Position numbers and translations under genes: made by a program | The notes under the pieces: model-generated | The model's database searches: none | What the model saw: only the letters and a program-made list of their open reading frames with translations | What the model was told of the DNA's origin: nothing | NCBI GenBank assembly: GCA_976226885.1 | Contig: OZ320320.1 | Location: 83,514,001 to 83,578,000, forward strand | Direction of reading: 5' to 3' | DNA: 64,000 nucleotides | DNA from: Iphione sp. A-MEVVRFRX5 | Lineage: Eukaryota | Shown here: in pieces, positions 22,301 through 63,762 of the stretch | Numbering within the stretch: the first letter of the stretch is position 1 | Layout: every line of letters begins with the position of its first letter

Positions 22301-25300
22301 CCTCAATTGTTACCCCCATCCTCTGCCGTGCTCCTGTCACTCTAGAAGTCTTCACACCTCCTCAGGTGCTACTCCGGTCCTTAGCCATACTCCTGTCACT
22401 CTCAGAAGGTCCCACACTGCTCTAGGTGCTAGCCCCATGCTTAGCTCTTCTCCTATGGTTGTTAGAAGGTCCCATACCTCCTTATGTGGAAGAAATGTTA
22501 GGAGAAAACATTTTTAGAATTTTCTAAGATGGTTGCAAGTGTTATAACCAATTAAAAATGTTACAAAATGCTTTTAAAACGTTGTGGACTGCCTGGGACT
22601 TAAACGTTACCAATATATTTCCACTCTCATTTCAAGCACAGTTCAAGCATATCTTATATTCTCTCCGTTGTAAATACAGAATTTATAGTGATCACATATT
22701 AATTTGATTGATTTTGGATGTAAATCACATTATTTTGTATTGTACACACAAATCAACGCAAACACAGATAATCCTACAATGGGTATGGCTTACAAGTCAA
22801 GCAAGTAGAGGCATGTACAGGCCCCAGATATGTAATTTGTACTTTTAATTAAACTTACAAGATGATAGAATGCGATAATTTTGGAATTATAGATATCCTT
22901 CCCTATTATCATGTCACAACCCACTTAACTAATGTCCCTTTGTTCCTAGCTTCTTAAAATTATAACAATATTCAGATAGTTGTTGTGGAACCTTAGTCAC
23001 AAAGTAAGGTTTTGCAATTTCGTTTTTGATTCACCTTTCTCTTTGTTTCTCTGCAGTTTCCATGCCTAATTGTGACTTTTATAATATGCTGGATCTCTGC
23101 GTCCATGGGGAATGCTTTATGAATGCATCAATGTATCCAACATGCCGGTATGATACCATTTATAATATGGATGTATAGCCCCTAAGGCTGCCCAAAACGT
23201 ATCTGTGTTTCCGGTAACCTGACCGACCCTTCATAGAAGCCATTTGTAACCTTTTTATTTATTATTTTGTGATTATCTTCAGATTGAACCGTGTATTAAA
23301 CTCGCACCATACACTATAGTGTTCCTTAGGGTACTAGCTTCCATTTGTTATAAGTGTCATTAAAATCTAAGAAGCAGAAATGGTATTACCCTCTATACAT
23401 GTACAGTGGAAAGCCTCTAATCAGGGCACCCTTTGTTCTGTCCCTATTTGAGACGTGTCCCCATTAGAGACTTCTTTTCATATAAGACAAATAGGACCTG
23501 TTCTTTCTAGAAGTGTCCCTATTAGGGACATGTCCCTATTGGAGACGTGTCCCTAAGGTGGCTTTCTACTATATATACCTTTCAGTATCCATTAACATTG
23601 AGGAAGAAAAAGAGGAAGGAAAACAAACACCTACTAAGTGACCCTCTATTTTGTCAGGATGTTACCCCAAACATAGATATTTTTAGGCCTTGTCAACTGA
23701 TAGGCATAAAAGTATCCCATTTCATTGTGGGAAACTTAAATGGCAGTGCAAATGTTTACATAATTCTTTCTTAAAGTAATTTGCACCTTCAGTTGATTCT
23801 TTTTTATAATGGTTTCATAGTAAGAGGCCTCAGGCCTCACGCCACAATAACCCACGAAATTGAAGCCTGTATCTAGAAAAATATGTTGTTACTGTCTTAA
23901 ATTAAAATGTGTTTTGTTAATGAATTATCTTGATGAAAAAAAACAGCTTCAGCCTCAGTATAGCTTTCTCTAGTGGATCTGGCCTGTAATTTGTACATTC
24001 ATCAGATTTCATCCATTGATATATTTTACTCGGCACTCTCCCTTCACTGAAAAAGAAATTTACCTTCATTACCAACCCCCCCTCAACAGCTGCGAGCTGG
24101 GATACCATGGTCGGTTCTGTCAGCGAGAACCCTGCGATGGCCTGGTGTGTGTCTATGGTACATGCAGCCTCGATGACTCGGGACACAGTTTCTGTCAGTA
24201 AGTATTTCCCCTGCTGTCTATGATGTATTCTTATCAGCTGTGCAAGTATTGTTGAGATCAGGGTTACCATGGGAAAATATTTAGCACAAACCCTGTGATG
24301 GCCTGGTGTGTATAAGGTACATGCACCATCGATAACTTTGGAGAAAGTTTCTGCCAGTATGTTGTTCCCCTGCTGCCCAAACCCTGTGATGGCCTGGTGT
24401 GTGTCTATGGTATATGCAGCATCATTGGCTCGGGTCAAAGTTTCTGTCAGTAAGTGTGTCCCCGACTGTTTATGATATAATCATATCAGCCATGCAAGTA
24501 TAGTTGAGAGCAAGGTTGCCATGAGGAGTGCACTTTCAGTGTGAACCCTGCGATGGCCTGATATGTGTCAATGGTACATGTGGCATTAATGACTTGGGAG
24601 AATGTTCATTTCAGTAAGTATGTCCCCTGCTGTCTATGACATAATCATACCAGCTGTGCAAGTATGGTGGAGATCTGGGTAGCTATGAGAAATACATTTA
24701 GTTTGAAAAATAGTAGTTGAGCCGACTGGGGAGAGGGGGAGGATGCTTGTTTGTGAGGACTTCCTTCTTCTACAGCTCCTATGTCTACCTTCACTTACAT
24801 CCAAAACCAGCGAAGGTAAAGGTTTCAACCCTGAAAATTATACTTGACATTTTTTGTAATGATACAATCATTAAAATGCTTATTATGCTTATTGTAATTC
24901 CTTGTATTAATTTGGCATTATGGACAAATTATGTCTATGATTTTGTTTACGTAATTGTTTATATTAAGTGACTATGGAGATGATAATTATCTGAATTTTG
25001 TTTTACTTTAAATCCCTTTTATATAACAGTGGGAGCAATTTTATCTCCAGGCCTGGAATCCATTAAAAAGTGTCTGTTGTTAAACGTATTCTGAAAGTTA
25101 CGTAAAATCCACTACTAATCTGCATGTAAATTAATCAGTCTGGTTTAAGTGCTTGTATTTTGGACAATCAAGAAAGTATAGCACTGTTTGGTAATAATTC
25201 TTCCACCTAACCTGTATGCCCATTTACCAGACCACTCTCCAACACACAGTTACATCCACCTATGTTGTCATCCTCTTAATAGTCCCATCAAGTATTACTG

Positions 25301-45030: not shown

Positions 45031-46594
45031 GTCCGAGGAAGCTCCTGGACTGCTTCATGGGATGTTGGAAAGAAATATCTTTCAAATGTTTTCAAACCAA
45101 CGTTTGCTTCCACCTCTAACTGGATAAGGTGGGGCTACGTGGTCCGAGAAATTTTAATCTATCGCATTCGGAGCTAGGTGCAAGATGTTTGTTTATTTAT
45201 GTATACAGATGAGCCCCTCATTCCAGGCAACCCTCTAATCAGGACATCCCACATTAAAGACCGACTGTATACAGAAACAAGTGTCGATAGGCATGTTTGA
45301 ATGCTCCTACTATAATGGACACCTCACTTTATTTTACAATTTATGGTCCGTCCCTTTGCTGTCTATATTGGAGAGGTTCCACTGTATATACGTCAACAAT
45401 ATATCTCAACCGTGTGTATGGTTGAGATGGGTTAATTACAGACACAGAAAGTAGTAAGTCTTCTACCACTGCAGTTACGACTCTGTGGGAAGGACACATT
45501 TCTTCTCACACGTGATGCTTTACTGGAATTACATCAGCATATCATTCAGTACAATAGCCCCACCCCCACCTTATCCGATGACTATAACTGATATTACTAC
45601 TTAACTGACACACTCTGCGAAGGACCACATGTGAAAAATGGATTGAAAAAATCTCCGTAACAGACAACTCCCGACAAAATCCTAAGGAACCAAAAGTGCC
45701 AGTTATTGAGGGACCACTGTACAAGAATAAGAACTGACTGCTATGAATGAACACTCCATGGTAGACCATTAGAATCGTCATTCAACATTAGCTCAGTTAG
45801 TCTATCCACATACCTGTGACGGGGCGGGGGGCTGGTACAGAGATGGTGTACCGATGTTGTCGGAGGCACCGTAAATTCACAACTTTTTGTCCAAGTCATG
45901 GCAATTTGTGAAGAAGAAAAAATTGTTGTCATATACATATATTTTCTTTTCCTGAAAGAATGATCTAGCCACGTCCCCTTCTGCGCAGGAGAGCCACAAA
46001 GGTGGTAGGTAGGACACCACTCAGTATGCAGGGAGCTGGCTCAGGCAGGGTGTCTCAAGGACCCAGAGGAAACACAGGTGGGGGCCAAGGCCCCGAGCAA
46101 GGTTGATTGGTTTTTCTCTTGTAATGAAAGGGAGGTAACTATCTCTGGTCATGACTTGCACCAAACGTCGATTATTGCAGTGTTGTTGTCTGTGTTAGTT
46201 ATAACAGGGGGGGTCAGGGGGTACCCAATAATGCATCACCTAGAATTCAGACCATCTGTAACACTTAAAGAAATGACAAATAACGCTTCACATGAAATTA
46301 ATTCTTTGATAACGCTTCACCAGGATATGCCTAATAACGCTTCACGTGGATCTAGAAGGGTGAATAACGTTTCACGCGGAATTAAAATCTTCAACGATGC
46401 TTCACCAAAATAGTTGACCCCCCATGTGTTATATAACCTAAGAGCACTACGCAATACTGGACAGTCACCACCAGAGTTAGTTTACCTAATAACATGAACG
46501 GTTCTGACATTTCCGATGCCATTTGTTTCTTGGCATAGATCCATTGTATGGAATATATACATATATATAGGGCTGAGTTAGAAACGTGGCATAT

Positions 46595-49500
46595 TTAAAC
46601 AACTTGGTCCTGCCGTGTTTTCTTGAGAAGTTGTTCTTCAACAGTTTCCTTCTGCTGTTTGAGGGTGTTCAGCCACCGTACTGAGGGAGAACACAGGAGT
46701 CGCACTCTCTGAAATAAGACAGGAAGGGCATAACTAACACAGGCATCACACTCTCTCAAACAGGACTGGAAGGGCATGACTAACACCGGAGTCATACTCT
46801 CTAAAACAGGACTGGAAGGGCATGACTAACACTGGAATCATACTCTCTCAAACAGGACTGGAAGGGCATGACTAACACCAGAGTCATACTGTCTGAAACA
46901 GGACTGGAAGGGCATGACTAACACTGGAGTCACACTGTCTGAAATAGGACTAGATAGAGATGACTAACACGGGAGTCATACTCTCTGAATGAGGACAGAA
47001 AGAGCATGACTAACACGGTAGTCACACTCTCTGAAACAGGACTAGAAGGGCATGACTAATACAGTAGTCACACTCTCTGAAATAAGACAGGAAGGGTATA
47101 TCTAACACAGGAGTTGCACTCTCTCAAACAGGACTGGAAGGGCATAACTAACACTGGAGTCACACTGTCTGAAATAGGACTAGATAGAGATGACTAACAC
47201 GGGAGTCATACTCTCTGAAAGAGGACAGAAAGAGCATGACTAACACGGTAGTCACACTCTCTGAAACAGGACTAGAAGGGCATGACTAATACAGTAGTCA
47301 CACTCTCTGAAAGAGGACTGGAAGGGCATGACTAACACCGGGGCCATACTCTCTGAAACAGGACTGGAAGGGCATGACTAACACCGGAGTCACACTCTCT
47401 GAAACAGGAAGGGAAGGGCATGACTAACACCGGAGTCATACTCTCTGAAACAGGACTGGAAGGGCATGACTAACACTGGAGTCACACTCTCTGAATGAGG
47501 ACAGGAAGAGCATGACTAACATGGATGTCACACTCTTTGAAATATGACTGGAAGGGCATGACTAACACCAGAGTCACACCGTGTGAAACAGGACTAGAAG
47601 GACATGTCTAACTTATGTGGGCTTGGCTGGACAACTTTCTATGGATATAAATATGGAATAGAACTTAATGTTATCAGGTGACTTCACAAGAGTAAAGCCT
47701 CATCTCAGGACTGTGTACACAGTAGTACCTGTAGTAACGACAAGTACTTACAAACCCCTATGAACATGTGATAAACTGCTGTGTATGCTGAATAAACAGC
47801 ATAAGTTAGAACACAAGTCTTCACTCCACCTCACCTACATAAACAGTACAGAGTCCCTTCTGATCTCAGAGATATGGCAACCCTAGACAAGGCCTTCCCT
47901 ACCTTTCTCCAGGGTATGCTCTGGTCCATGGTGAACAGCCTCCAGAGGGCGGTGAGGGGGATGGCAGACATGAGGAGAAACGTGATCACCCAGCCAACCA
48001 CATCGGCCCACACGGGGAAGGTGTACGCACCATATGTGAGGCGCTTGTAGTCAACGAAGTTCAACACTAGCACCACCTAATGGGACAAAACAGAACCATA
48101 TGTGAGGCGCTTGTAGTCAACGAAGTTTTGACATCAGCACCACCTAATGGGACAAAACAGAACCATATGTGAGGCATTTGTAGTCAACGAAGTTTTGACA
48201 TCAGCGCCACCTAATGGGACAAAACAGAATCATATGTGAGGCATTTGTAGTCAACAAAGTTCAACATCAGCTCCACCTAATGGGAAAAAACAGAACCATA
48301 TGTGAGGCATTTGTAGTCAATGAAGTTTTGACATCAGCACCACCTAATGGGACAAAACAGAACCATATGTGAGGCATTTGTAGTCAACGAAGTTTTGACA
48401 TCAGCGCCACCTAATGGGACAAAACAGAACCATATGTGAGGCATTTGTAGTCAACAAAGTTCAACATCAGCTCCACCTAATGGGAAAAAACAGAACCATA
48501 TGTGAGGCATTTGTAGTCAACGAAGTTCAACATCAGCACCACCTAACGGAACAAAACAGAAGATATTGTACGCTGTTCACAACAACCTGTTGAAAACGGC
48601 ATAGTTCTCTATCTGTGGAAATCACAGGAGAATTCTTAGAGCATACATATGCGCTTTTAAACTGTAAGTCAAAAAAGATTATCTGTGTTTGTAGTAACAT
48701 GCTGAAAAAATATTGGTTGATAACTAGGTTGGTCGTTTTTTTACCGCACAAATATTTCAGTAAAAAGAAACTAGATAGTACTTCCAATCCTGGTTCAATC
48801 CCTTCTATTGCTTGGGTATTAATGACAATATCATGTGAAAACTAGTGACATGGCAAACAAAATGGTGTATTATTTGGATCTGTAGTGTTATTCATTTAAA
48901 GATATGGGCAAAACAATTATTCTTATAAAGTCAGAACAGGCCAACCAGAAACACAGATATCTTTTAGATAGCCCAATCTACATATGTATATGTAAACAGC
49001 AATATGGTGAAGGTTGTATTGAAAGAGGACTTAGACTTCTATCTATCTATTAAAGCAATGTTACACTGACTTTCTTACAGGACTGCTGCATCATGTGCAC
49101 GGCATGGTATCCATGGACAACAGCGGCCATGGATACAGAGCCTGAAGTCAATTTAGTAATTGATCAATAAAGAGGAGCTGTGCTAATCCAAATTAATATG
49201 GTCAGGTCAACATAACTGGTGTTTTTTTAAATGTATTTCTTTAACTTCGTTTACACCCATTACATCAGTTAACACCACCAAGGAACCTCAAAGCTAAGTG
49301 GACGCTAAATTGTGATTTCCAAATTCAGAGTGAAATGTTAAAGACTTGATGACACTTTATTTCTCAGAAGGTGATTCTCACATTGAGGTAACTACATGGG
49401 AATATGCCTTATACAGCTTACATCAGTATTAGATATCATACAGTGAAAAGTCACATTGGAGACCAAGCCTGGGACCCTGCCCCGGGTTGGTCTCCCCTAC

Positions 49501-52500
49501 AGGTTGATATCTAGTGTAGAAATGGAGTTTGGTACTGTACAATTTTGATCTCTCCTCTGAGTTGGTGTCACCTGTGGGTTGGTCTTTAGGTAAGTTTCCA
49601 CTCTATGAAGAACTGACTCAAAGCAGTTTTTAGAAATGAGTTCAGCCTATACAATACATGATTGGAAGAGAAGGACATACCACAATCGCCAGGGAAGCCG
49701 TCACCGTGCAGGTCACCAACCACAGCCCACCTGTGCAGACACCGATGATGCCTCCCAGATCCTTTATGAACCATTGCAAACCTAGCAGATAAAGTACAGA
49801 GAAGGACGTACCGCAATCGCCAGGGGAGCCGTCACCGTGCAGGTCACCAACCACAGCCCACCTGTGCAGACACTGATGATGCCTCCCAGATCCTTTATGA
49901 ACCATTGCAAACCTAGCAGATAAAGTACAGAGAAGGACGTACCGCAATCGCCAGGGGAGCTGTCACCGTGCAGGTCACCAACCACAGCCCACCTGTGCAG
50001 ACACCGATGATGCCTCCCAGATCCTTTATGAACCGTCGCAAACCTAGCAGATAAAGTACATTATCAGCTGTGGCTGGAACTGATAAGGGCCCCAACAGAA
50101 AAAAAAGTTTAACGTACTGAAAAATAAAAGGGTTGGTAGATCAATGGTGTCTTACTTGTTTCTATATGCAAATGCCACAGGAAAAAGCTAGTGAGAATTT
50201 GTCAAGCCTGGTACTGTAATTCCTCATTTTTTAATCGTACTCAAGCTAATATTATACAAATGCTAATGACCAAAGGAATACAATGTGATTTTGTATAAGT
50301 CTCTATCGTTATTCATTCCAAAGATATGAACAAAACAAGAAAAAATTATTATTCCATTGGGAGATTTTTAAAAGGGGGGCAGTCAGGTTACCAGAAACGT
50401 GGATATTGTTTCACAAGCCTACAAGTGATGTCATATATATATATATATATCATCTAGGAACTTGTAGATTCAATAATTAAACAATGTTTTCACTACTTGT
50501 CCGTGCTTTACTCATTGCTTTGTTTATTCATTGGTGCACAACTTGACATGGTACAGCAGACATACAGAGGGCTATGCATTTGACCTGTTGCACAGAGGAA
50601 GCTTTGGCGGGGTCCCTGAGAGGCTAGATCTTTGGTAGTATTTTTCTTGCTTTTTTTCATTTTGATTAGTGTGCTCATTTGGTTACTCTGTCTTGATTGT
50701 AATCATTCCAGGGACGTATCTAACCAATAAATACATAATAATATGTTATTAGTCAGTCATCTGCTAATTATACTGTCACGCGACACCTATTAACATAGGT
50801 CCCCGTACCACTTGATACATTGGCCTAATAAAAGGCTAGGACGGTCTGACACAATCAAGACTAGCAAAATCAGTATACAGAGGATATTCAAAATCTGAAC
50901 GATCGCTGTTTCCACTGAAATCATTCGGATTTCGGAAAATTCCGATTTTGAATAGTAGTGTGAGGCCACTGCCACTTTCAATCAGTTAAGTGGGGCCCTA
51001 GGCCCTACCTCGACACTTTCCATACCTACAAAAATGAAATAAATCATGTAATTAATGTGAACTATTCATCTGAAAATCAGCAAAACGAAGCCAAATTTGT
51101 CCGAAATTTGGGAAATTCAGCCAAAAATCATTTGGATTTTGGACAGAAATGTTCAGTTATATTGGTATTTTAAGAGAGAAAAATGATTCGTAACAGCCAA
51201 TTCTGTTTAGATTTGGGATAATTTTGTTTTTGAGTGTTCAGTTTTGGAGTATCCTCTGCATATGTCAATTATACCAGTGGGATTATCAAAGGCCACAAGG
51301 AGGGGGGCGGGGGGGCAGATGTTTGAAAGTTTAAGGACCCTTTTACATGTGCCCATTTTACTTCACAGTGAATGCTGCTTGACTTGATTTCTATCTGAAC
51401 TATTTACATGTATCTGATCACAATGCATATGGGCACATTTAAATTTCACCAATCTGTCCAGGACTGATTGTATTGCAAACAGATATGTAACCAATAGATT
51501 TCTATAGCACATTCCTCCACCTACACATCTGGTGACCCATTATGCCATGCAGACTTGTCAGAAAGTGATTTTGTGGGGAAATGTGTGCCATTTTGGACAA
51601 TGTGTGCATATATATAAGTGGCCTAAGCAGTCAGAGAAAACAAGACTGGCCATAATCTGCACTCCAGCATTCTCCTTGCTAAGGCAGGGTTTACGTGTGC
51701 CATTCTCCTTGCTAAGGCAGGGTTTACATGTGCCATTCCCTTTGCTAAGGCAGGGTTTACATGTGCCATTCTCCTTGCTAAGGCAGGGTTTACATGTGCC
51801 ATTCCCCTTGCTAAGGCAGGGTTTACATGTGCCATTCTCCTTGCTAAGGCAGGGTTTACATGTGTCTGTTGTTCATGCAAACAGATGTGTTTCTGTGATT
51901 GTATAACAACTCATACCATGTGTTCATGCAAACACATGCGTTTCTGATTGTATAAGAACTCATATCACATGTTCATGCAAACACATGCATTTCTGTGATT
52001 ATATAACAACTCATATGACATGTTCATGCAAACACATGCATTTCTGTGATTGCACAAAATAATCATACCATATCATATCTACTAGCTTTGCACATGTGCC
52101 TATTTAGTAATGCAATGTGATGTGTTTGCATTCCTGCTCTCCATCCAGGATGGGTTAGCCAGCAAACGGGCGTGTTTCTCGATAGGTATGCATTGTGGGA
52201 ATCATATCTTGACCATGTGATATTAAATCATCATACACATCTACCGGGGGTTTATACACAATGCGCCGTTGTTTGTTAAAATCAAAATAGATACACGAGA
52301 AAGACCCCCTAGCTTTGAAACAGGCCAGCCCTCATGAAATGGGGTTTGAGATTGGAAAAATAAATGCAAGAGGCAGTGTGACATCAGCTGCATGGATGTA
52401 ACGATGTAAGAGGCAATCAAGTATGGCCGCCATCTTGATTTCTCCTCGTATCTGTATGTGAACCGTAGTGACCACACCCTATAAAGGAGCCTATAGTTTA

Positions 52501-55500
52501 GAGGGAAAACACAGCCAAATGGGTCCCTCTTCGTAGCACGTCACTATGAAATGACATGATGTATATTTCTTCTTGACACGATCTGCAGCAATAACTATTT
52601 ACCTAATTAACCCATTTACAAGTCTTGAGAAAGTTATCATTTAGTGAAACCCCTCCCGGTTTTTAACTGTGAAGTAGGGGACCTCTCAAACTATGGACAA
52701 GTTAACCTTCTGGAATATGTGAGGTGATCCAAAGGAAACCAAGAGCTCTCGAGTCCCTGGCTTATCAATGGATATCATCTGGAGTCCCCTGGCTTATCTA
52801 TAGATATCATCTGGTGTCCCCTTGCTTATCTATAGATATCATCTGGTGTCCCCTGGCTTATCTATAGATATCATCTGAGTCCCCTGGCTTATCAATGGAG
52901 ATCATCTGGAGTCCCCTGGCTTATCTATAGATATCATCTGGAGTCCCCTGGCTTATCTATAGATATCATCTGGTGTCCCCTGGCTTATCTATAGATATCA
53001 TCTGGAGTCCCCTGGCTTATTGATAGATATCATCTGGAGTCCCCTGGCTTATCTATAGATATGATCTGGAGTCCCCTGGCTTATCTATAGATATCATCTG
53101 GTGTCCCCTTGCTTATTGATAGATATCATCTGGAGTCCCCTGGCTTATTGATAGATATCATCTGGTGTCCCCTGGCTTATCTATAGATATCATCTGGTGT
53201 CCCCTGGCTTATCTATAGATATCATCTGGAGTCCCCTGGCTTATCTATAGATATCATCTGGATTCCCCTGGCTTATCTATAGATATCATCTGGAGTCCCC
53301 TGGCTTATCTAGAAATATCATCTGGAGTCCCCTGGCTTATCTATAGATATCATCTGGAGTCCCCTGTCTTATCTATAGATATCATCTGGAGTCCCCTGGC
53401 TTAGCCGTCTAAAGAATATCACTCTAGTTCCTGTGATACTAGCTAAAACAGCCATCTTCATCTGCCGCTCTCTTACTGGGTTATCCTCGGCCTAGTTACT
53501 ATTCTGTGACACGTGATGTGATAAAATATCCTGCCAACAGCGATGTTGTCGCACAGCTCGTCGTCTGGCGAGTTGACGTATTGCTAGAGGGACCCATAGG
53601 CAGGGATTTGTGTGTGTGTGCGGGGGGGGGGGTTGAGTATCTGAAAGTATAAAAGTTGAACTCCTGGCGAGCTTTCTGCAGCAGAGAATTATAAAGGTAG
53701 GTCTCTGGGTGGGATTTGTAGGTCCCCTGATACCCCTTAGCTACACACAGGTGGGGGGGGGGGTGTCAGGGTCCACCCAATAACACTTCACCAACAATTC
53801 AAAGCAGTCGCTTAAAAATACGCTAATAACGTTTCACCAAGAATTGATTTGGCAATAACTGTTCACCAAAAATTGCCTTATAAAGTTTCGCGCCTGTTTG
53901 GAAGGCCAAAATAGCGTTTTGCACTGAATCAAAGTCCTCAATAACATATCACCAGAATAGTTGAACCCCCCCCCCCCCTGTAGCTACGGGCCTGGCTAGT
54001 GTGTACTTCTGAGCTGGAATTGGTGGCTTACCGTAAACCCAGGCCACAGCGATCGTCTTGCAGAGTCCGGTAAAGACAAGCACGTACGGGGCACTGGTGT
54101 CCAGCATCTGCAGGATGTACATGCCCGCCTTGAACGAAAAACATTTCACAATCATACTCCAAAGATGGTCGACTTCCTGATCTAGACTGGTGATATTATC
54201 AATAAAAAAAAGGACCAGGAAATTTCAAACTACCGTTCTTTTTCCCAACTGTAAGTTAACATCCCCGGAATACTCATATTGATAACAGGCTCAATTAGCT
54301 GTAGGACCAAAGGTTTGTTCCCCGTGTTGAATTTCCAAAGGATATATATAAAGTGATATTTTATTGCAAATGTCGGTTGGCATTGTCTCTGAGATGCTAT
54401 TTTATAACTGATTGATGGTAAGGCATTGTTCATGTGCTGCCCAATCTGGACGGGACTTATATATTGTCTACTACTTGACTCTTTGTGCTGATTGGCGAAG
54501 GACACAACTGAATGAAATTAACTACTGAACGTTTGAAAACATCTCAGAATCAACAGTCCCAGTATGCAAAATTAAAAAGATTCAAGCCGTTGCCCCAGGT
54601 TAGACCCACAGATTGATTAGAAGCTGCTGCCTTTCACCTACCTGTGACGTCAAAATCACGCCGGCGAGAGTCCACGTGACAATGAGACCAACCAATAGGA
54701 ATAGAGGACGCCTACCACGTGAAAAAAGGCCGGGAAAACGCTCCACGAGGATGGTCTGCACGTTGGCGGCGATAGGCATCTATAAGATGGAGACTAATGG
54801 AGTTTCAGCCGGTGAGATGCACAAATCCAACGTGAGCAGGAAAGCGTGCAGAATGCCCGCCGCCTGAATATGAGAGGGGCATATACACACAGGGTGCCAC
54901 ATATTCTGATGAAGCATTACTACTATTACTGGGTATTTTAATTTATAGTGAAGCATTATTTGCCTCTTCAAATAGGGGTGAAGTGCTACCAATGAATCAA
55001 TTCTTGGTGAAGCGCTATCAGCGATTGTTAAAGTGTTATGGTGGTTTTGAATTCTTGGTGAAGCGTTATTGGGTACCCCCTGATCCCCCTCCCCCCCCCT
55101 GTGCATATGGTCTTTCGATAACCCCAATCCACCCTTGACGGAGTGTTGCAGCTCACTGAAGCATCTCCAAGATCAACATCAAGGGAGTTCGAGTTGGTAA
55201 GATACACAAATCCAAGGAAAAAGGAGAGCTTGCGTAGAATGCTACCCAAGGAGGATATGGAAGAACTGCTGAAATGATAGCGGACTATCTTGTTCCTGGT
55301 TAAAGATACAGTGAAAATGAAATGATAAGATTAAGTCTGTTGATCCTGGAGCTAGGCATCAGCCATCTGCTGTAAGTATCAGGCCCATAGCCAGGAACTG
55401 TTGTGGGGGGTATCTGAAATTAGAGAGGTTGAACTCCTGGTTAGGAAGATGAAACTCCTGATTACATTACATCTGTCTCTCTTTCACTCTCTCTCTCTCT

Positions 55501-58500
55501 CTTGCTCTCTCTCTCTCTCTCTCACTCTCTCTCTCTTTGTCCCTCTGTCTCTCTATTCCTCTCTCTCCTTTGCCCTTCTCTCTTTGTTCCTCTCTCTCTT
55601 TGTCCCTCTGTCTCTCTATTCCTCTCTCTCTTTGCCCCCTCCCTCTCTCCCATATGGACTTGGAGAGGTGTAACCCCTGGTTTTGTGGAGGGGTATTGGA
55701 CGATATCCCCCCGATACCCCCTTGGCTACGGGCCTGAGTATCACTCTGCTGAGGGTTCTCCATACTCACACAGCTGCCGAGGCCGAGGTTGAACACCATG
55801 AACATGAACAGGGCGGACCACAGGGGCGCCACAGGCATCCGTGCCAGCATCTCAGGATAGGCGACGAAGGCTAGACCGGGCCCTGAAGAGGAACACACAG
55901 TGAGCCCATCAGTCCCAGCATCATTCTACGAGGAGTGTTAGTCAGGGTAAAATAACTATCAGTCTTTTAAATACCAAGTATATGATAAAAGAAAACAATC
56001 ACTTCCATAGGAGGATAGGGTCAAAGTGCCGTTTGTATTTTGTATTTTGTGGAAAACTGAAATGAGAATATGGGTTGCTAATTCTGTATAGAATACAACC
56101 GATGTTAAGAAAGATAAGCATACCTTGACCAATGACCTCTGGGATGGCCACCTGCAATGCGTCTTGTCTGATGTTTTCTTACTTCAGATAAGAAAGATAA
56201 GCATACCCTGACCAAAGTCCTTTTTGGATGCCTACCTGTAATGTCTGTTTTCTGATGTTTTCTTACTTTAGATAAGAAAGTTAAGCATACCTTGACTGAT
56301 GACCTCCGGGATGGCCACCCGTAATACGTGTTGTCTGATGTTTTCTTACTTAAGATAAGAAAGATAAGCATACCTTGACCAATGACCTCCGGGATGGCCA
56401 CCTGCAATGCGTGTGCTAGGTGACCCAAGATAGCAAACACAACAATGCCGCAAAGCATGCTGGTCAAGAAGTCTGAGATGGTAACAATGATGCCATCACT
56501 AGAAAAAACAGTATAATCACTATATCATGTCAGTGTATGAAGTGAAAATGTTCAGCAACACATGAGGCCTAAACAAAAATATCTATGTTTCCAGAAACCC
56601 GACCCACCCTGATATTGGTATGCCAATGGAATACTTAAATTGTTTTTCTTGTTTTGTCAATATCGTTGGCATGGATACTGATAGAGGCTTGTGCAATAGA
56701 TCAATTTATTCCTTAGACCATTATGTTTCTAATGATGCATGTTTCATTACATTCCTTGTGATAGAAGTGACAGTATCAGGCTTGAAAATAACTGAATAAC
56801 AATTTCATAAGAACATTTGAGTGGTCAAAAAAATATAAGATCAACTGACCGACCTTGTGTTTTTCTACATAATAATGGAAACAAGCATATTTTTGTTTTA
56901 GCCTAATGTGATAGTAGGATTAAATCAGTACTATGCTATGGTACCAAACTATGCCACAATACATGAAATAGCAATGTATGAGGTACTAGTTTCCAATAAA
57001 GCTTTATTCTTCAACTGGGATGGTTGGGTAATTTATAGCACTTATATTACACATTGTGGTACACAGGGCAAGTGTGAGATGTGTGTGGGGATTATTTGAG
57101 ATATGTGCCAGGAGTAAGAGGAGGGCACTGTGTGAGGTGTGTGCCAGGAATGTGTGGAGGGCACTGTGTGAGGTATGTGTCAGGAGTGTGAGGAGGGGAT
57201 TGTGTGAGGTATGTGCCAGGAATGTGTGGAGGGCATTGTGTGAGGTATGTGCCAGGAATGTGTGGAGGGCATTGTGTGAGGTATGTGCCAGGAATGTGTG
57301 GAGGGCATTGTGTGAGGTGTGTGCCAGGAATGTGTGGAGGGCACTGTGTGAGGTGTGTGCCAGGAATGTGTGGAGGGCACTGTGTGAGGTGTGTGCCAGG
57401 AGTGTGAGGAGGGGATTGTGTGAGGTATGTGCTAGGAATGTGTGGAGGGCATTGTGTGAGGTGTGTGCCAGGAATGTGTGGAGGGCACTGTGTGAGGTGT
57501 GTGCCAGGAATGTGTGGAGGGCACTGTGTGAGGTATGTGCCAGGAGTGTGAGGAGGGGATTGTGTGAGGTATGTGCTAGGAATGTGTGGAGGGCATTGTG
57601 TGAGGTATGTGCTAGGAATGTGTGGAGGGCATTGTGTGAGGTATGTGCCAGGAATGTGTGGAGGGCATTGTGTGAGGTATGTGTCAGGAGTGTGAGGAGA
57701 GCATTGTGTAAGATATGTGTCAGACATATAAGGAAGGGATTGTGTGAGGTGTGTGTCAGGAGTGTGAGGAGGGCACTGTGTGAGGTGTGTGCCAGGAGTG
57801 TGAGGAGGGCATTGTGTGAGGTATGTGTCAGACATATAAGGAAGGGATTGTGTGAGGTGTGTGCCCAGAGTGTGAGGAGAGCATTGCGTAAGGTATGTGT
57901 CAGACATATAAGGAAGGGATTGTGTGAGGTGTGTGCCCAGAGTGTGAGGAGGGGATTGTGTGAGGTGTGTGCCAGGAGTGTGAGGAGGGCATTGTGTGAG
58001 GTATGTGTCAGACGTGTAAGGAAGGGATTGTGTGAGGTATATATCAGGTGTGTAAGGAAGGCATTGTGTGAGGTGTGTGCCAGGAGTGTGAGGAGGGCAT
58101 TGTGTGAGGTATGTGTCAGACATATAAGGAAGGGATTGTGTGAGGTGTGTGCCCAGAGTGTGAGGAGAGCATTGTGTAAGGTATGTGTCAGACATATAAG
58201 GAAGGGATTGTGTGAGGTGTGTGCCCGGAGTGTGAGCAGGGGATTGTGTGAGGTGTGTGCCAGGAGTGAGAGGAGGGCATTGTGTGAGGTATGTGTCAGA
58301 CATGTAAGGAAGGGATTGTGTGAGATGTATGTCAGGAGTGTGAGGAGGGGATTGTGTGAGGTGTGTACCAGGAATGTGAGGAGGGGATTGTGTGAGGTGT
58401 GTGCCAGGAGTGCGAGGAGGGGATTGTGTGAGGTGTGTACCAGGAATGTAAGGAAGGCATTGTGTGAGGTGTGTACCAGGAATGTGAGGAGGGGATTGTG

Positions 58501-61500
58501 TGAGGTGTGTACTAGGAGTGTGAGGATGTGATGTGAGGGGAATGTCTGGGGTGAGTTTGGGGACGAGAGGTCGAGTGTATGACTTAGGTGCATAAAACCA
58601 GAAATATGGTCAGCCCATCGTTTCATCCGGTTACTAATTGAATGTGGAGAGGGATGTCAGCATAAATTTATTCTTGAAAATTTTAAAAACTACACATCGC
58701 AAAAGAGTACTTAGATTGTTAGGATTCAAAGTACAGTCTGCTTTTAAGTCAAAGCAATTAGTCAATTTCTATCAGTCACGATCAGGTAGACATCAGGAAG
58801 AGGCATCTTCATTTGAGTGGACATTAGGCCTAGTGAAAATGATTGTGTTTCCAGTGACCGGACTGATCCTACATAAGAGCCAGTTATAACATTTTTTCTT
58901 GTCTTGTGAATATCTTCAAAATGAATAAGGATAAACACATGTGTTATATACCAAAGTATTCCATAGGACACTAGTTTTCATCTGATATAAGTTTAGGTTA
59001 AGGTCTCAGCGGTAAAAGTGACATGAACATAATACATTGGTACCTACTAGTATATATTAACACTGCAAAAAGAAAAGAAATGTCACCTACCAACCGACAT
59101 TCTATTTGTTCAGCCTGTTACCAGAAACACAGAACATTCTTTACGCTTATTTAGATGTACACACAGAGTAAAAAATATATACATTTACAACGAACAATTT
59201 TACCCGTTTGCCACCACGGAGTACTACAGAAACCGGTCCCGCCCTCTGGTATTCTGTAAAATGCCTGATATCCTAGTTCTGGCTTATTTCTCAACTACTG
59301 GAGACCTACTTCAGGCGTGTATAGTCTTTATTTCCAGGCACCCGTCTGTCTGTCTGTCTCCAGGCAGAGCGTCAGTGTGTCAGTCTATCTCCTTTTTCTT
59401 TATTAGGAATTATCTCTATTTTCTTAGATGTTTATCACACTGCAGACAGTGACACAACGTTCTCCCTCTCTCTCTGTCTTTCTCTCTCTCTCCCTCTCTG
59501 CCTTCTATCTCTCTGTATCTTTCTTTCTCTCTCCCTCTCTTTCTCCCCCCCCCTCTCTCTCTCTGTCTTTCTTTCTCTCTCCCTCTCTCTCTGTCTGTCT
59601 CTCTCTGATCCCTCTGTCTCTCTCTATCTGGCTGTCTCTCTGTCTGTCTTTGATTCCTGTTTCTCTGTGTCTCTCCCCCTGTCCCTCCCTCTCTCTCATC
59701 TCTCTCGCTCTCTCAATATACACATCTATACATGTATAATTAGATGTATAGATATATATATATCCCAGAGGCTAAATTAGACAGACAAGTATTCCCCGGG
59801 GGTAATAATTGTCATCATTCTTTGGCGCGCTAAACCTATACTTACCATCATTAACGATTTGGAATTTTTGGCAGCCGATTGCCCTTATATGGGAACATAA
59901 TGAAAGGTGAGAGGGTGTATTCGGAAACCAAGCAGACACAGACTTTTAGTCATAAAAGGTGAAAGGGTAAATTTAGAAACCAAATCATGAAAGGAGAGAG
60001 GTTGCATTCAGAAACCAAACCATGAAGGACTCAGGGTGCATTCGGAAACCAAGCCAACACATACTTAAGTCGTAAACTGCTTGTGAAGTGCAAGCAACCT
60101 AATCTAGGGTGAGGTAATGAAAGAATAGCAACTCAAGCTTTCTTTAGGGCCACAAAGTAGGCCGGGCGCTGTGTCAGTCGAGTCATAGGTCAAAGGTGAA
60201 AATGTGTAACGAACTTGTCAGTGTAATAATTTTTTGTCAGAGGACATCAAGATATCATCAGGACTTCGTTCAGATGTATGCCACATCACATTTAATTTAA
60301 CCCTGCAGAACTGTCATATGTTGATATCTCGATGGTGTAAGATAATGTATTTCGATGAGCCTGAATTACCCGCAGTAGTAAGGAGTTGTTTATCATGGTT
60401 TTTGCATGAGGTACGTTGTGTGCGGGTAGTTAGCACCAGCATGTATACCAAGTTACCTTGGAGCTAGGGCTGGTCTCCACACCTGCTCTGGTATCTGTGC
60501 ATTTTCTATTTTCTGTGCGTGTCAGTCAGTTTTTATTGATCATGTTGATTTCAATGAAGGGTGCCATACATGTCCGTGTGGCTTGAGATCCGTTTGAGGT
60601 ATGTTGGCCATTAAGGGGCACTGGCCAAAAATTAAACGCACACACAGAAATCAACAGATAGCAGTATACAGGTGAAACTATGCACATTTATGAATATTTT
60701 TGAATATTTTTTATGCACATTTATGAATATTTTTGAATATTCTTTATATTTATGAATATTTTTGCACTTTTCCCCTCATTTCTGCACGTATGTGCACATG
60801 GTCGCACATTTCTTCACAATTTTCATACTTTTTTCCAGTGACTTTCACCAGTTTTTACACTTTTCTGCAGTGATATTCCTACTTTTTTCAGTGAAATTCG
60901 CCAGTTTCTATTTTTCCCAGCGACATTCATGTTTTTCATTCCGCCTCATGCAACATGAATACACGGTCAATAGCTACCCCTATCCGCGAGCCTGCATGAT
61001 GGCGGAACACGCGTATGATGCATGTTAACACCCACAGGTGGCAAGCGCAAGGGGGCACACACCTCAACGCACGCGGGTGTGTAAACCGCAGCCATTACGT
61101 GACTTATTTTGGAGTGTCGTGTTTGAGCTGGGAATGCGATGCATGTGGTCATAATATATATAAATTCGTGGTGCCTGTGTGTGTATGTATGTGTGTGTCT
61201 GATAAGGTACAATTAGGATATTAGGATATCGTAGTGAAAGTTTAGGACATCAGGGGATCGGACTGAAAAATGAATGTGTTTTTTTCCCACAGATACGGAT
61301 AAAGACGTCAAGCAAGTGGCAGAGAATTGGTTGAACAATTGCAGAGTGACAAATACGAGACGGAACAAGACAACAATTAATATTACAGAATAGGCAAGAC
61401 ACACGAACAATATAACAGGAGTACAAATAGACAAAAGTAGCAATTTCAAAATAGGCAAGGAATGTGTTAATGTGGTAGACAACGAACAGGGAATGTTCAG

Positions 61501-63762
61501 AAGCAGTGAACAAATGTCCAGTTAGAAGTAGAGTAGGAGACCAAGCTTGCAACTGAACAATTTTGGTCTCTACCCTGAGTTGGTCTCCCCTGTGAGTTCA
61601 TTAGCAGTGTAGAAATAGAGTTTTGGACTTGGAACGGTTTTTGTCTCTCCCCTGCATTGGTCTCCCGTGTGGGTTGGTCTTTGAGTTTTGACTGTATAGG
61701 CAGACACCCAGCAAGACTCACATGAAGCAGTTGTTGTTGACCTTGTTATGGCTCCCGATGGTGATGAGGACACCTCCACCACAGTTCAGGGAGAAGAACG
61801 CCTGGACCGCCGCATCAGCCCAGACCTGGAATAACCAGAGATACACACACTCAGCAAACATGCTTTATTCGTCTGCTTCGTAAGGCCTAAAACTCTATCT
61901 GTATTTCTGGTGACATGCTGAAAAAATGTAGGGTCAGCAGATCGGGGATATTTTAATATTTTTATTTCAGTGTTAACTAATATTGAAACAAAATAAGGCC
62001 AAAAAAATAGGTGTGTCTCAGTAAAGACCACCAAAAAAACTAGGTAGGGAGCAGGGTATCTTTATTTTTTTTTAAATTTTCTTTCCACTTTCTTCCTCTG
62101 GTTTTCAATAATAATAAAGATAATATGAAGAATTTAGGCTAATTTGCAGTTTTTTGCTGAATTTCCATGGATTTTACTGTTTTTCTACTGAATTTTCCAA
62201 AAACATGTGCTTTGAAAACACATATCTAAGAAAATTTAGCCTTGGAAACTCTTTGAGACCAAAAATTTTTTAGGTAGGGTGAGGTTTTACTAGGTAGGGG
62301 TGGGTTACCAGAAACACACCTATTTTTTTGGCCGAATGTATATAGCAATTTCACTTCGATCACCTAGATAACTGGTCTCACACAAAAGCTAGTGATATAA
62401 GAGACAATGTGGTGTATTGGATGAGTCTGAAGCTCTATTCATTCCAGAGATAGGGGCAAAATAATTATAAGATTTAAAAAAACTCCGACATACCCAACTG
62501 TAGGGTCCGTCAGGTTACCAGAAACAAAGATATTTTTTACAACGCCTAAGCCTGCATGGACTTGGGAAGGAAATACGGTAACTTTTTTTATACGACTTGT
62601 TTCAAAATATAAAGCTGCATGTAGAATTCTCTAGTTCCTACCTTACCGCGACTTGAATTCACATTTAACAGGGGTGGAAAATAAAAGATATACTGACATG
62701 TGTTTTAGATCAGTGGTTATGTCAGCTGTAAATTGGTAGATCAATAAAAAGGTCTCAACACAAGAATATCTAGTTCACTCCAAAGTGCACTGAATCTGTG
62801 TGCATGGATATGCTCTCTCATGAAGTGCAGGGAGAGAGTGTTTGTTAATTCTTTTAAGCATCCTTTCTCATACATGTTTATGGTCAGAGCCCTAATTGGC
62901 TTGGATACAAATAATTCTTGTACAGAAATAAGCATCATACTACACGATCAACTCAGTTGCAATACCCTCCAGAAACCCCGTCTGATTACCAAATCTCATA
63001 TTGTGAAGTATCTGTGCTGGAAAGGCATGGGTACTGCGTCAACCACAATACCAGTGGAAGTACATATGGCAGCCCTTCATCGCCAGCCTAAGATCCCACA
63101 CCTACATGTGGCCTCATTGATCCCAACCTTTACCCTTCGGTCATTCTATTCGGTTTTCCCAATCCGTATATCCTTCCTGTGCTCTTTGCTGTCCTCCATT
63201 TCTACTGAACTGTCCCTCATCTTTTCTATCCTATTGTCTGTCTCTATCCCCAGCCTATCGGTGTACCATGTAATCCTTAGAGTTTCTAACTGCTGCCAAA
63301 CATCTAGACTACATTGACATCCTACACAAAAGCCGATTGTTACACCATACCTACCCCATGAGAAACTGAAACATGATGGGATTCCATGCAGTAGACTGAC
63401 TTACGGCAGGTGTTCCAGGGGTTGTCACAGGAAACCCAGGGCACCTTAGCAACCATTGGTCCACCACTGGTCTTTGGTTGGACTCTCGTTCCCTCTGTGC
63501 TCTAACCCTGATCCCTCCTTCTCCACGAGTCATCATCTCGCGGGACCTTCCCTATCGGCTCCTCCCAGATCCCCTCCACCCCCCGCCTCTCTACACTCCC
63601 ATGTACTTCCCCATCGTTGGTACTTACCTTGGCTGACTGCAGGCGGACCCAGTCTGGCTTGAGGAAGAAGACGAGCCCGTCGGCCGATCCGGGTGACAGC
63701 AGGGTCTGTATCAGCAGGGACACCAGGATGACGTACGGCAGCAAGGTCGTGACGTAACTAAT
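46595..63762 (-). CDS. SLC6 (sodium:neurotransmitter symporter family) transporter, 3' half TM5-TM12 (366 aa), probably an amino-acid transporter; 5' exons outside the window
   Basis: GT-AG exons in phase: 63628-63762 ([11 protein letters not shown]...KPDW), 61722-61825 ([13 protein letters not shown]...NNNCF), 56374-56498 ([13 protein letters not shown]), 55770-55882 ([11 protein letters not shown]...LGLGSC), 54642-54779, 54032-54128 (GMYILQMLD...WVYG), one of 49943-50043/49812-49912/49681-49781, 47903-48076 ([12 protein letters not shown]), 46595-46708 (stop); total 1101 nt. Confidence 0.93.
46690..47610. repeat. 46-bp minisatellite (~20 copies) spanning the acceptor of the last SLC6 exon
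   Basis: Minus-strand unit ...CCCTTCCAGTCCTGTTTCAG|AGAGTGTGACTCCGGTGTT, i.e. intron end plus exon start. Confidence 0.95.
48030..48560. repeat. 66/67-bp tandem array spanning the acceptor of the SLC6 TM12 exon (8 acceptors)
   Basis: Acceptor AGs (CT on + strand) at 48077, 48144, 48211, 48277, 48344, 48411, 48477 and 48543. Confidence 0.95.
49681..50043 (-). repeat. 131-bp x3 tandem triplication of the entire 101-nt SLC6 TM11 exon with its splice sites
   Basis: Each copy reads ctgctAG|GTTTG...ATTG(C/T)G|GTA(C/T)GT. The spacers 49782-49811 and 49913-49942 are 30 nt. Confidence 0.95.
51665..52050. repeat. 33-bp array (~6 copies) followed by a ~47-bp array (~4 copies)
   Basis: Units CCATTCTCCTTGCTAAGGCAGGGTTTACATGTG and TGTTCATGCAAACACATGC... 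Confidence 0.9.
52755..53405. repeat. 32-bp minisatellite, ~20 copies, with a palindromic core
   Basis: Unit GTCCCCTGGCTTATCTATAGATATCATCTGGA; the core TATCTATAGATA is a perfect palindrome. Confidence 0.95.
56105..56410. repeat. 83/84-bp tandem array spanning the donor of the SLC6 TM7 exon (3 extra donors)
   Basis: Donor GTs (AC on + strand) at 56372, 56289, 56205 and 56122. Confidence 0.92.
57075..58530. repeat. 36-bp intronic minisatellite, ~40 copies
   Basis: Unit TGTGTGAGGTATGTGCCAGGAATGTGTGGAGGGCAT with sub-variants. Confidence 0.95.
59460..59715. repeat. CT-rich low-complexity tract; a similar tract lies at 55470-55650
   Basis: Direct reading. Confidence 0.9.

What the first reader, a model, noticed from the sequence alone, without database searches (positions are those of the whole stretch)
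46595..56500. Systematic tandem amplification centred on splice junctions (junction echo arrays)
Seen: four of the nine SLC6 exons in the window have a tandem array built from their own junction: 83/84-bp donor x4, 131-bp whole exon x3, 66/67-bp acceptor x8, and 46-bp acceptor x~20. The Sushi-EGF gene has two more. Junctions occupy a tiny fraction of the locus, so this looks non-random. In every case one frame-preserving site survives at the exon-proximal edge and the decoys are out of frame or stop-containing. Units carry individual substitutions, arguing against assembly stutter. Inference: either a mutational process targeted to junctions (e.g. co-transcriptional or R-loop-linked slippage) or a selective filter, since duplications spanning a junction leave a working exon. 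The result is intron growth and a reservoir of unproductive or alternative splice sites. I know of no named system with this pattern.
Basis: partly seen in the sequence, partly recalled or inferred. Interest (0 to 1): 0.75.

Follow-up and report, generated by a model that had tools for sequence, protein, structure and literature searches.

The report
Tandem repeats copying splice junctions
Four short tandem repeats in one transporter gene each began as a copy of an exon edge with its splice site; this is a known oddity ("mirage" minisatellites), and it is somewhat more frequent at exon borders than random placement predicts.

Summary
A minus-strand SLC6 transporter gene has nine exons in the window. 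Four carry a tandem array built from their own junction: 46 bp x20 (acceptor of the last exon), 67 bp x8 (acceptor), 131 bp x3 (whole 101-nt exon plus 30-nt spacers) and 83 bp x3.7 (donor). The units occur nowhere else in the 1.18-Gb genome, differ by substitutions, and show higher-order repeats, so they are local, real arrays.

[quoted passage not shown] That one working site sits next to the exon is a geometric necessity, not a finding.

Enrichment is real but modest. Under a founding-unit null, this gene has 4 junction arrays against 0.5-0.9 expected. An independent sample of 30 SLC6 paralog exon loci has 4 of 10 against 1.05-1.5 expected (P = 0.01-0.03). The cause is open; I found no R-loop signature.

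Whether the decoy sites are used, and whether array length varies, could not be tested: no sequencing run was listed. This scan has already reported the same pattern in many other windows of this genome. Verdict: new members of a known kind.

The parts
46595..46708 (-). SLC6 last coding exon E9 (37 codons plus stop); acceptor AG at 46710-46709
   Evidence: Open frame in phase with E8. The acceptor is inferred; no homology support.
46690..47612 (-). 46-bp x20 acceptor array: 27 nt of intron end plus the first 19 nt of E9. It has 19 decoy units, 17 of them keeping AG.
   Evidence: All units are exactly 46 nt, with a partial 5-unit higher-order repeat. Decoys read RV then a stop.
47903..48076 (-). 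SLC6 exon E8 (TM12, 58 codons)
   Evidence: Pfam SNF positions 475-522; aligns to solved dopamine transporters.
48029..48561 (-). 67-bp x8 acceptor array: 19 nt of intron end plus the first 48 nt of E8. It has 7 decoy acceptors with the same pyrimidine tract.
   Evidence: A 200-bp three-unit higher-order repeat is present. Decoys stop after 8-21 codons.
49667..50060 (-). 131-bp x3 array: the whole 101-nt exon E7 (copies at 50043-49943, 49912-49812, 49781-49681) with 30-nt spacers
   Evidence: All three copies have intact AG and GT. Any single copy is in frame; two or three copies give a stop.
56374..56498 (-). SLC6 exon E3 (TM7, 125 nt)
   Evidence: Pfam SNF positions 295-336; borders read.
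56106..56414 (-). 83-bp x3.7 donor array: the last 41 nt of E3 plus 42 nt of intron. It has 3 decoy donors with the same 9-mer as the real one.
   Evidence: The decoys add 83, 167 or 250 nt, all frameshifts. No other copy in the genome.
51668..52052 (.). Two purely intronic arrays (33 bp x6 and 51 bp x3.6), used as controls. The 51-bp array borders a dispersed repeat.
52747..53403 (.). Purely intronic 32-bp x20.6 array, local to this locus (control)
57097..58526 (.). Purely intronic 36-bp x40 array (control)
54032..55882 (-). SLC6 exons E6 (54128-54032), E5 (54779-54642) and E4 (55882-55770), none with a junction array
61722..63762 (-). SLC6 exons E2 (61825-61722) and E1 (63762-63628), neither with a junction array
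24120..24520 (+). Sushi-EGF gene: the 3' part of an EGF exon plus its donor, with two decayed copies downstream (a donor-side junction duplication)

Best explanation
These are 'mirage' minisatellites. Each array began as a local tandem duplication, by slippage or unequal exchange, of a 46-131-nt segment that happened to straddle an exon-intron border of an SLC6 transporter gene. It then grew by unequal crossing-over. Shown here: the anatomy, the local origin and the higher-order repeats. The arrays are tolerated because only the copy contiguous with the rest of the exon gives an intact reading frame. All other copies lie inside the intron and are removed with it. Inferred: the exon-proximal site is chosen by position, through exon definition or 5'-to-3' scanning as shown for human F7, and any use of a decoy gives a frameshift or early stop. 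The net effect is intron growth and about 31 look-alike splice sites, not a dedicated system. The whole-exon triplication is the same process with a unit that contained the entire exon. Its 30-nt spacers are too short to be spliced, so at most one copy can be used productively. Junction-spanning arrays are about 3-8 times more frequent than uniform seeding predicts. The cause of that excess is unresolved.
For: Arrays and periods. Units in register with the junction, with individual substitutions and higher-order repeats of 5x46 and 3x67 bp. Exon identity. The units have no other copy in the 1.18-Gb genome. Decoy frames and stops. The same kind of array occurs at other junctions of four other SLC6 paralog exons on other chromosomes: L009 62 bp x7.3 (acceptor), L015 69 bp x7.4 (acceptor), L011/L016 142 bp x2.9 (donor), L033 49 bp x14 (donor). 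Named precedents: PMC3087553, PMC3902484 and PMC1557585. Junction and intronic arrays have the same range of unit identity (83-96% against 84-95% in the window), so the two groups are of similar age and homogeneity.
Against: A purely neutral, uniform seeding model under-predicts junction arrays. It expects 0.5-0.86 in the window gene and 1.05-1.5 in the paralog sample, against 4 observed in each. No RNA or read data could be obtained, so the silence of the decoys and the array lengths are not shown. The E9 acceptor is inferred.
Confidence: 0.8

Rival explanations
1. A mutational process aimed at exon-intron borders seeds tandem duplications there preferentially. Candidates are transcription- or splicing-coupled damage, strongly positioned exon nucleosomes, or replication stalling. 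The arrays would then mark a junction-linked mutagenic mechanism.
For: Junction-spanning arrays exceed the founding-unit null 4.7-8x in this gene and 2.7-3.8x in an independent paralog sample. The excess survives GC matching. Three of the six non-spanning arrays in the paralog sample lie within 100 nt of an exon.
Against: The unbiased sample is small: 10 arrays, P = 0.011-0.032. The junction sits anywhere from 0.2 to 0.9 of the unit length, and unit sizes range from 46 to 142 bp. There is no sense-strand G richness as expected for R-loop-prone DNA. Microhomology at the array ends is only 1-3 nt. Half of the arrays in the same genes are deep in introns.
Confidence: 0.2
2. The arrays are functional. 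Decoy sites would tune expression through unproductive splicing, decoy acceptors of the last intron would make a tail-less transporter, and the three E7 copies would be regulated mutually exclusive exons.
For: Decoy sites are as strong as the real ones: the E8 pyrimidine tract and the E3 donor 9-mer are identical. A decoy acceptor of the last intron would place its stop in the last exon, so by the usual rule the transcript would escape nonsense-mediated decay. The E7 copies keep intact sites, equal length and phase, and 30-nt spacers, which fits the steric criterion for exclusivity in PMC5740500.
Against: Differences among the E7 copies are 5 non-synonymous to 1 synonymous, and copy 3 loses a proline kept in paralogs, which looks like decay. 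Decoy exon parts carry stops and a CpG-decay TGA. In amphioxus and human F7 such decoys are silent (PMC3087553, PMC1557585). No expression data exist here.
Confidence: 0.07
3. Assembly artefact: the arrays are stutter or mis-joined haplotypes.
For: No read-level check was possible.
Against: Units carry many private substitutions and an ordered higher-order structure. The arrays are 0.3-0.9 kb, which I take to be short for a long-read assembly. The genome is in 89 contigs for 1.18 Gb. The same kind of array recurs at unrelated loci.
Confidence: 0.03

Closest known systems
'Mirage' minisatellites of amphioxus (Adh3, globins BflGb6/BflGb9, troponin C, PGBD5)
   Same: Tandem repeats whose unit spans an exon-intron boundary, at either the donor or the acceptor side. 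Units are tens to about 160 bp with 81-100% identity between them. They carry copied AG/GT signals. The authentic site lies at the edge of the array (PMC3087553, PMC3902484).
   Different: A different genome: 1.18 Gb with contigs over 100 Mb, apparently not a lancelet. Earlier scan notes call it an annelid-type worm, which I did not check. Four arrays occur in one gene, including a whole-exon unit. Splicing and length instability, both shown in amphioxus, are untested here.
Human F7 intron 7 37-bp VNTR (5' pseudo-site array)
   Same: The first unit spans the exon-donor boundary, so the real donor is followed by identical pseudo-donors. This matches the 83-bp array after E3 and the paralog arrays in L033 and L011/L016.
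   Different: In F7, 50 constructs showed that only the most upstream donor is used, through 5'-to-3' scanning (PMC1557585). Here that is only inferred.
Tandem exon duplication giving mutually exclusive exons
   Same: The three E7 copies have equal length (101 nt, not divisible by 3), equal phase and intact sites, with spacers below the roughly 50-nt steric limit (PMC5740500).
   Different: The copies are 96% identical and differ mostly by non-synonymous changes. There is no sign of divergence under selection and no transcript evidence.
Intron creation by internal tandem duplication (Rogers model; Zhuo 2007 and Gao & Lynch 2009, as cited in PMC3087553)
   Same: A tandem duplication copies splice signals inside a gene.
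   Different: No new intron was made here. The arrays sit in existing introns, and the E2 and E4 acceptor positions (profile positions 246 and 324) are shared with many paralogs.

Membership tests
mirage minisatellite | Head-to-tail array with a unit of tens to about 160 bp | tested here: met
   TRF periods 46, 67, 83 and 131 with 3-20 copies.
mirage minisatellite | The unit contains an exon edge, the splice dinucleotide and adjoining intron | tested here: met
   with exon borders. For the 46-bp array this depends on the inferred E9 acceptor.
mirage minisatellite | The authentic exon is the terminal unit and the other units lie in the intron | tested here: met
   Only the exon-contiguous copy keeps the frame.
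mirage minisatellite | Locus-specific origin, not a transposon-borne satellite | tested here: met
   The units match only themselves in the own genome.
mirage minisatellite | Normal splicing is undisturbed and the decoys stay silent | not testable with these tools
   No sequencing run was listed.
mirage minisatellite | Length instability or polymorphism | tested here: inconclusive
   Higher-order repeats (5x46 bp, 3x67 bp) show past unequal exchange. No second haplotype or reads were available.
F7-type donor pseudo-site VNTR | The first unit spans the exon-donor border and identical donors follow | tested here: met
   Four donors with the same 9-mer at 56374, 56291, 56207 and 56124.
F7-type donor pseudo-site VNTR | Only the most upstream donor is used | not testable with these tools
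   No RNA data.
mutually exclusive tandem exons | Adjacent homologous exons of equal length and phase with intact splice sites | tested here: met
   Three 101-nt copies, each with AG and GT.
mutually exclusive tandem exons | Joint inclusion is prevented by frame or by steric hindrance | tested here: met
   Spacers are 30 nt. Copies 1+3 or all three give a stop at codon 39. Criteria from PMC5740500.
mutually exclusive tandem exons | Each copy is kept by selection and used in mRNA | tested here: inconclusive
   5 non-synonymous to 1 synonymous differences suggest decay, but there are too few sites and no RNA.
intron gain by tandem duplication | A new intron is bounded by duplicated segments at a position absent from relatives | tested here: not met
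   The E2 and E4 acceptor positions are shared with many paralogs, and the arrays lie within existing introns. E8 and E9 were not decided.

The most novel reading that the evidence does not exclude
In this genome the birth of tandem repeats may be truly biased toward exon-intron borders, by threefold or more beyond uniform and GC-matched expectation. That would imply a mutational or retention mechanism linked to junctions or to exon chromatin. Such a mechanism would lengthen introns systematically and seed thousands of look-alike splice sites: about 3% of junctions in my unbiased sample carry one.
Probability: 0.25. Interest if true: 0.6.

Novelty: new member of a known kind. Interest (0 to 1): 0.3.

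Why it matters
If only the ordinary reading holds, this is neutral clutter. It is still useful to annotators, because gene predictors can pick decoy sites or count exon copies twice. It also gives natural test constructs for how a spliceosome chooses among identical sites. If the junction excess holds genome-wide, it would be the first quantified case outside amphioxus. It would bear on how introns grow and how new splice sites and exons arise.

Tried and rejected

- RNA and long-read checks: the look-up of sequencing runs listed none.
I did not try to obtain more letters another way.
- The original mirage paper (PMC117041) is not held; I relied on two papers that cite it.
- Exons were searched one by one by reference.

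**Checks that came back blank**
- Homology support for the E9 acceptor: the PDB search was blank.
- A motif scan of paralog flanks was also blank.

**Explanations tested and rejected**
- Transposon origin of the arrays: the units are unique in the genome.
- Array coverage as the null (26% of the gene is array, so about 5 of 17 junctions would be 'expected'): an array can contain a junction only if its founding unit did, so the unit-length null is the right one.
- GC richness of exons as the cause of the excess: GC matching raises the expectation only from 0.5 to 0.86 and from 1.05 to 1.5.
- An R-loop signature: there is no sense-strand G skew.
- Intronic arrays as hidden exon copies: only chance 11-13-nt matches were found.
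- Unit lengths not divisible by 3: four of four has a chance probability of about 0.2, so it is not notable.
Full report
**What is there**

The window lies on a chromosome-scale contig (C17:83514001-83578000) of a 1.18-Gb assembly in 89 contigs. On the minus strand, from 63762 down to 46595, lie nine exons of an SLC6 (sodium:neurotransmitter symporter) gene. Six of the nine exon frames match Pfam PF00209 in collinear order, profile positions 200 to 522. The TM12 exon aligns to solved dopamine, noradrenaline and glycine transporters from its second residue. I read the borders from the sequence:
- E1 63762-63628
- E2 61825-61722
- E3 56498-56374
- E4 55882-55770
- E5 54779-54642
- E6 54128-54032
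- E7 50043-49943
- E8 48076-47903
- E9 46708-46595

Phases are consistent throughout.

TRF reports 46 bp x20.1 at 46690-47612, 67 bp x8 at 48029-48561, 131 bp x3.0 at 49667-50060 and 83 bp x3.7 at 56106-56414. Cutting each array in register with the junction shows what each unit holds:
- The 46-bp unit is 27 nt of intron end plus the first 19 nt of E9.
- The 67-bp unit is 19 nt of intron end plus the first 48 nt of E8. That exon part is conserved coding sequence.
- The 83-bp unit is the last 41 nt of E3 plus 42 nt of intron.
- The 131-bp unit is the whole 101-nt E7 with 17 nt of upstream and 13-14 nt of downstream intron. This leaves 30-nt spacers between three exon copies.

- There are 19 decoy units before E9, 17 still with AG. 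All stop within 2-6 codons, mostly reading RV then TGA where the real exon has CGA.
- There are 7 decoy acceptors before E8 with the same pyrimidine tract. They stop after 8-21 codons.
- There are 3 decoy donors after E3 with the same 9-mer as the real donor. They add 83, 167 or 250 nt, all frameshifts.
- Any single E7 copy is in frame. Copies 1+3, or all three, run into a stop.

One caveat concerns the E9 acceptor. It is inferred from the 37-codon open frame, while the rival AG 27 nt downstream gives three codons and a stop. Homology gave no support. From memory, an Arg-hydrophobic pair followed by a Pro seven residues later is usual just after TM12 in this family, and E9 begins that way.

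**They are real and local**

- Units carry private substitutions. Both long arrays have higher-order structure: a 200-bp three-unit repeat in the 67-bp array and a partial five-unit repeat with identical units at lag 5 in the 46-bp array. That is the trace of unequal exchange, not of assembly stutter.
- A search of the own genome with 46500-50300 and with 56000-58600 finds the arrays only at home. The other matches belong to dispersed repeats elsewhere in the introns.
- Read-level confirmation was not possible, because no sequencing run was listed.

**Is it more than chance?**

The gene also has six purely intronic arrays with a period of at least 20 bp and at least 2.5 copies: 33 bp x6, 51 bp x3.6, 32 bp x20.6, 36 bp x40 and two small ones. 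Arrays cover about a quarter of the gene, so a coverage null would 'expect' about 5 of 17 junctions inside arrays. That null is wrong. An array contains a junction only if its founding unit did.

I therefore collapsed every array to one unit. I then asked how often a segment of that unit's length spans a junction with at least 10 nt on each side, with exon-internal placements excluded.

| Sample | Expected, uniform null | Expected, GC-matched null | Observed | P |
|---|---|---|---|---|
| Window gene (10 arrays) | 0.50 | 0.86 | 4 | 7e-4 to 1.4e-3 |
| Independent paralog sample (10 arrays) | 1.05 | 1.50 | 4 | 0.011 to 0.032 |

The window was picked for this pattern, so I needed the independent sample:
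- A PF00209 search of the own genome gave at least 35 SLC6 loci, and the 30 best exon matches came with 1.5-kb flanks. These merge to 25 stretches totalling 91.5 kb, with 72 exon segments found by tblastn.
- TRF finds 10 distinct arrays there, and 4 of them are junction arrays. These are L009 62 bp x7.3 (acceptor), L015 69 bp x7.4 (acceptor), L011/L016 142 bp x2.9 (donor, with CA-rich intron parts) and L033 49 bp x14 (donor).
- The excess is therefore real but modest, about threefold, on a small sample. About 3% of junctions (4 of 144) carry such an array in the unbiased sample.
- I could not enlarge the sample.

**What it is**

[quoted passage not shown] They were described in amphioxus Adh3 and later in globin, troponin C and PGBD5 genes. 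Units run from 10 to about 160 bp, the arrays occur at both donors and acceptors, they show length instability, and they do not disturb splicing (PMC3087553; PMC3902484). The original paper is not held.

Humans have a tested example. The first unit of the 37-bp VNTR in F7 intron 7 spans the exon 7 donor. The identical pseudo-donors are functional but silent, because the most upstream site is chosen by 5'-to-3' scanning (PMC1557585).

The four arrays meet every sequence-level criterion of this kind. Splicing and polymorphism remain untested here.

The E7 triplication is the whole-exon version. It also meets the formal criteria for mutually exclusive exons (length not divisible by 3, spacers under 50 nt; PMC5740500). 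But the copies differ by 5 non-synonymous and 1 synonymous changes. Copy 3 has also lost a proline that paralogs keep. Decay is therefore more likely than a regulated choice.

**How it most likely works**

- Shown: local tandem duplication of a segment that straddled a border, followed by growth through unequal exchange.
- A geometric necessity, not a finding: only the copy contiguous with the rest of the exon can give the right mRNA. The working acceptor is always the last copy and the working donor always the first.
- Inferred: the exon-proximal site is chosen by position, and decoy use gives transcripts with early stops. For the last intron, a decoy acceptor would put the stop in the last exon. 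This could yield a transporter lacking its 37-residue tail instead of a transcript degraded by nonsense-mediated decay.
- Effect on intron size: the arrays make up 76%, 30% and 55% of the three introns concerned.

**Why the excess at junctions?**

A selective filter alone predicts no excess over intronic arrays per available position. I tested four possible causes:
- GC richness of exon-derived units: matching for GC does not remove the excess.
- An R-loop signature: sense-strand GC skew of the units is only -0.05 to +0.17.
- Better homogeneity or detectability of junction arrays: the ranges of unit identity are the same.
- A fixed position of the junction in the unit: it ranges from 0.2 to 0.9 of the unit length.

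None of these explains the excess. A regional bias toward exons, or better retention near exons, remains possible. In the paralog sample, three of the six non-spanning arrays lie within 100 nt of an exon.

**Earlier notes**

This scan has already reported the same pattern in many other windows of this genome. Twenty-five notes fit 'mirage minisatellite', and those notes gave me the name. I checked the name in the papers and tested the enrichment on my own sample. I did not verify their statement that the animal is an annelid-type worm. The contig sizes only suggest that it is not a lancelet.

**Verdict**

These arrays are new members of a known kind, of moderate to low interest unless the junction excess is confirmed genome-wide.

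Noticed in passing
window 49438-49612 and 48672-48944: Two dispersed repeat families sit inside the E7-E8 intron. The first has at least 40 copies at 72-85% identity on many chromosomes and is probably a SINE- or MITE-like element.
   Followed up: partly
window 56552-56911: Another dispersed repeat, with at least 38 copies at 68-78% identity, lies in the E2-E3 intron just upstream of E3.
   Followed up: no
L015:3095-3267 and L023:1-621 (C10:116993992-116994836): An array of about 850 bp is built of GTGAGT-like motifs, which resemble the donor consensus. It starts about 90 nt downstream of a real donor in an SLC6 paralog. It does not copy the junction itself.
   Followed up: partly
L015:577-1511: One paralog intron consists almost wholly of two adjacent arrays (94 bp x3.7 and 69 bp x7.4). 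The second is an acceptor mirage. The original intron was probably about 200 nt.
   Followed up: partly
window 54776-54830 and 55161-55215: A 55-nt stretch ending 4 nt inside E5 (its acceptor region) has a 75%-identical copy 385 nt upstream. It may be the remnant of an older duplication.
   Followed up: no
window 57004-58626: The 36-bp x40 array produces open frames of 400-540 codons on both strands. These are repeat artefacts, not genes.
   Followed up: no
window 27197-27900: A 149-bp x4.7 array lies at the end of a reverse-transcriptase-like frame on the minus strand. It is the tail of a retroelement, not a splice junction.
   Followed up: partly
window 46754-47582: Nearly all decoy units of the 46-bp array read TGA where the real exon has CGA, a CpG-to-TpG change spread through the array. 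Three of the four decoys nearest the exon have G or T rather than C at acceptor position -3.
   Followed up: partly
own genome: The SLC6 family is large here, with matches at 35 or more separate loci on 11 of the contigs. Several loci have long intron-poor exons.
   Followed up: no
window 51844-51917: The border between the 33-bp and 51-bp intronic arrays matches three other genomic places at about 85% identity. At least the 51-bp array may therefore belong to a mobile element.
   Followed up: no
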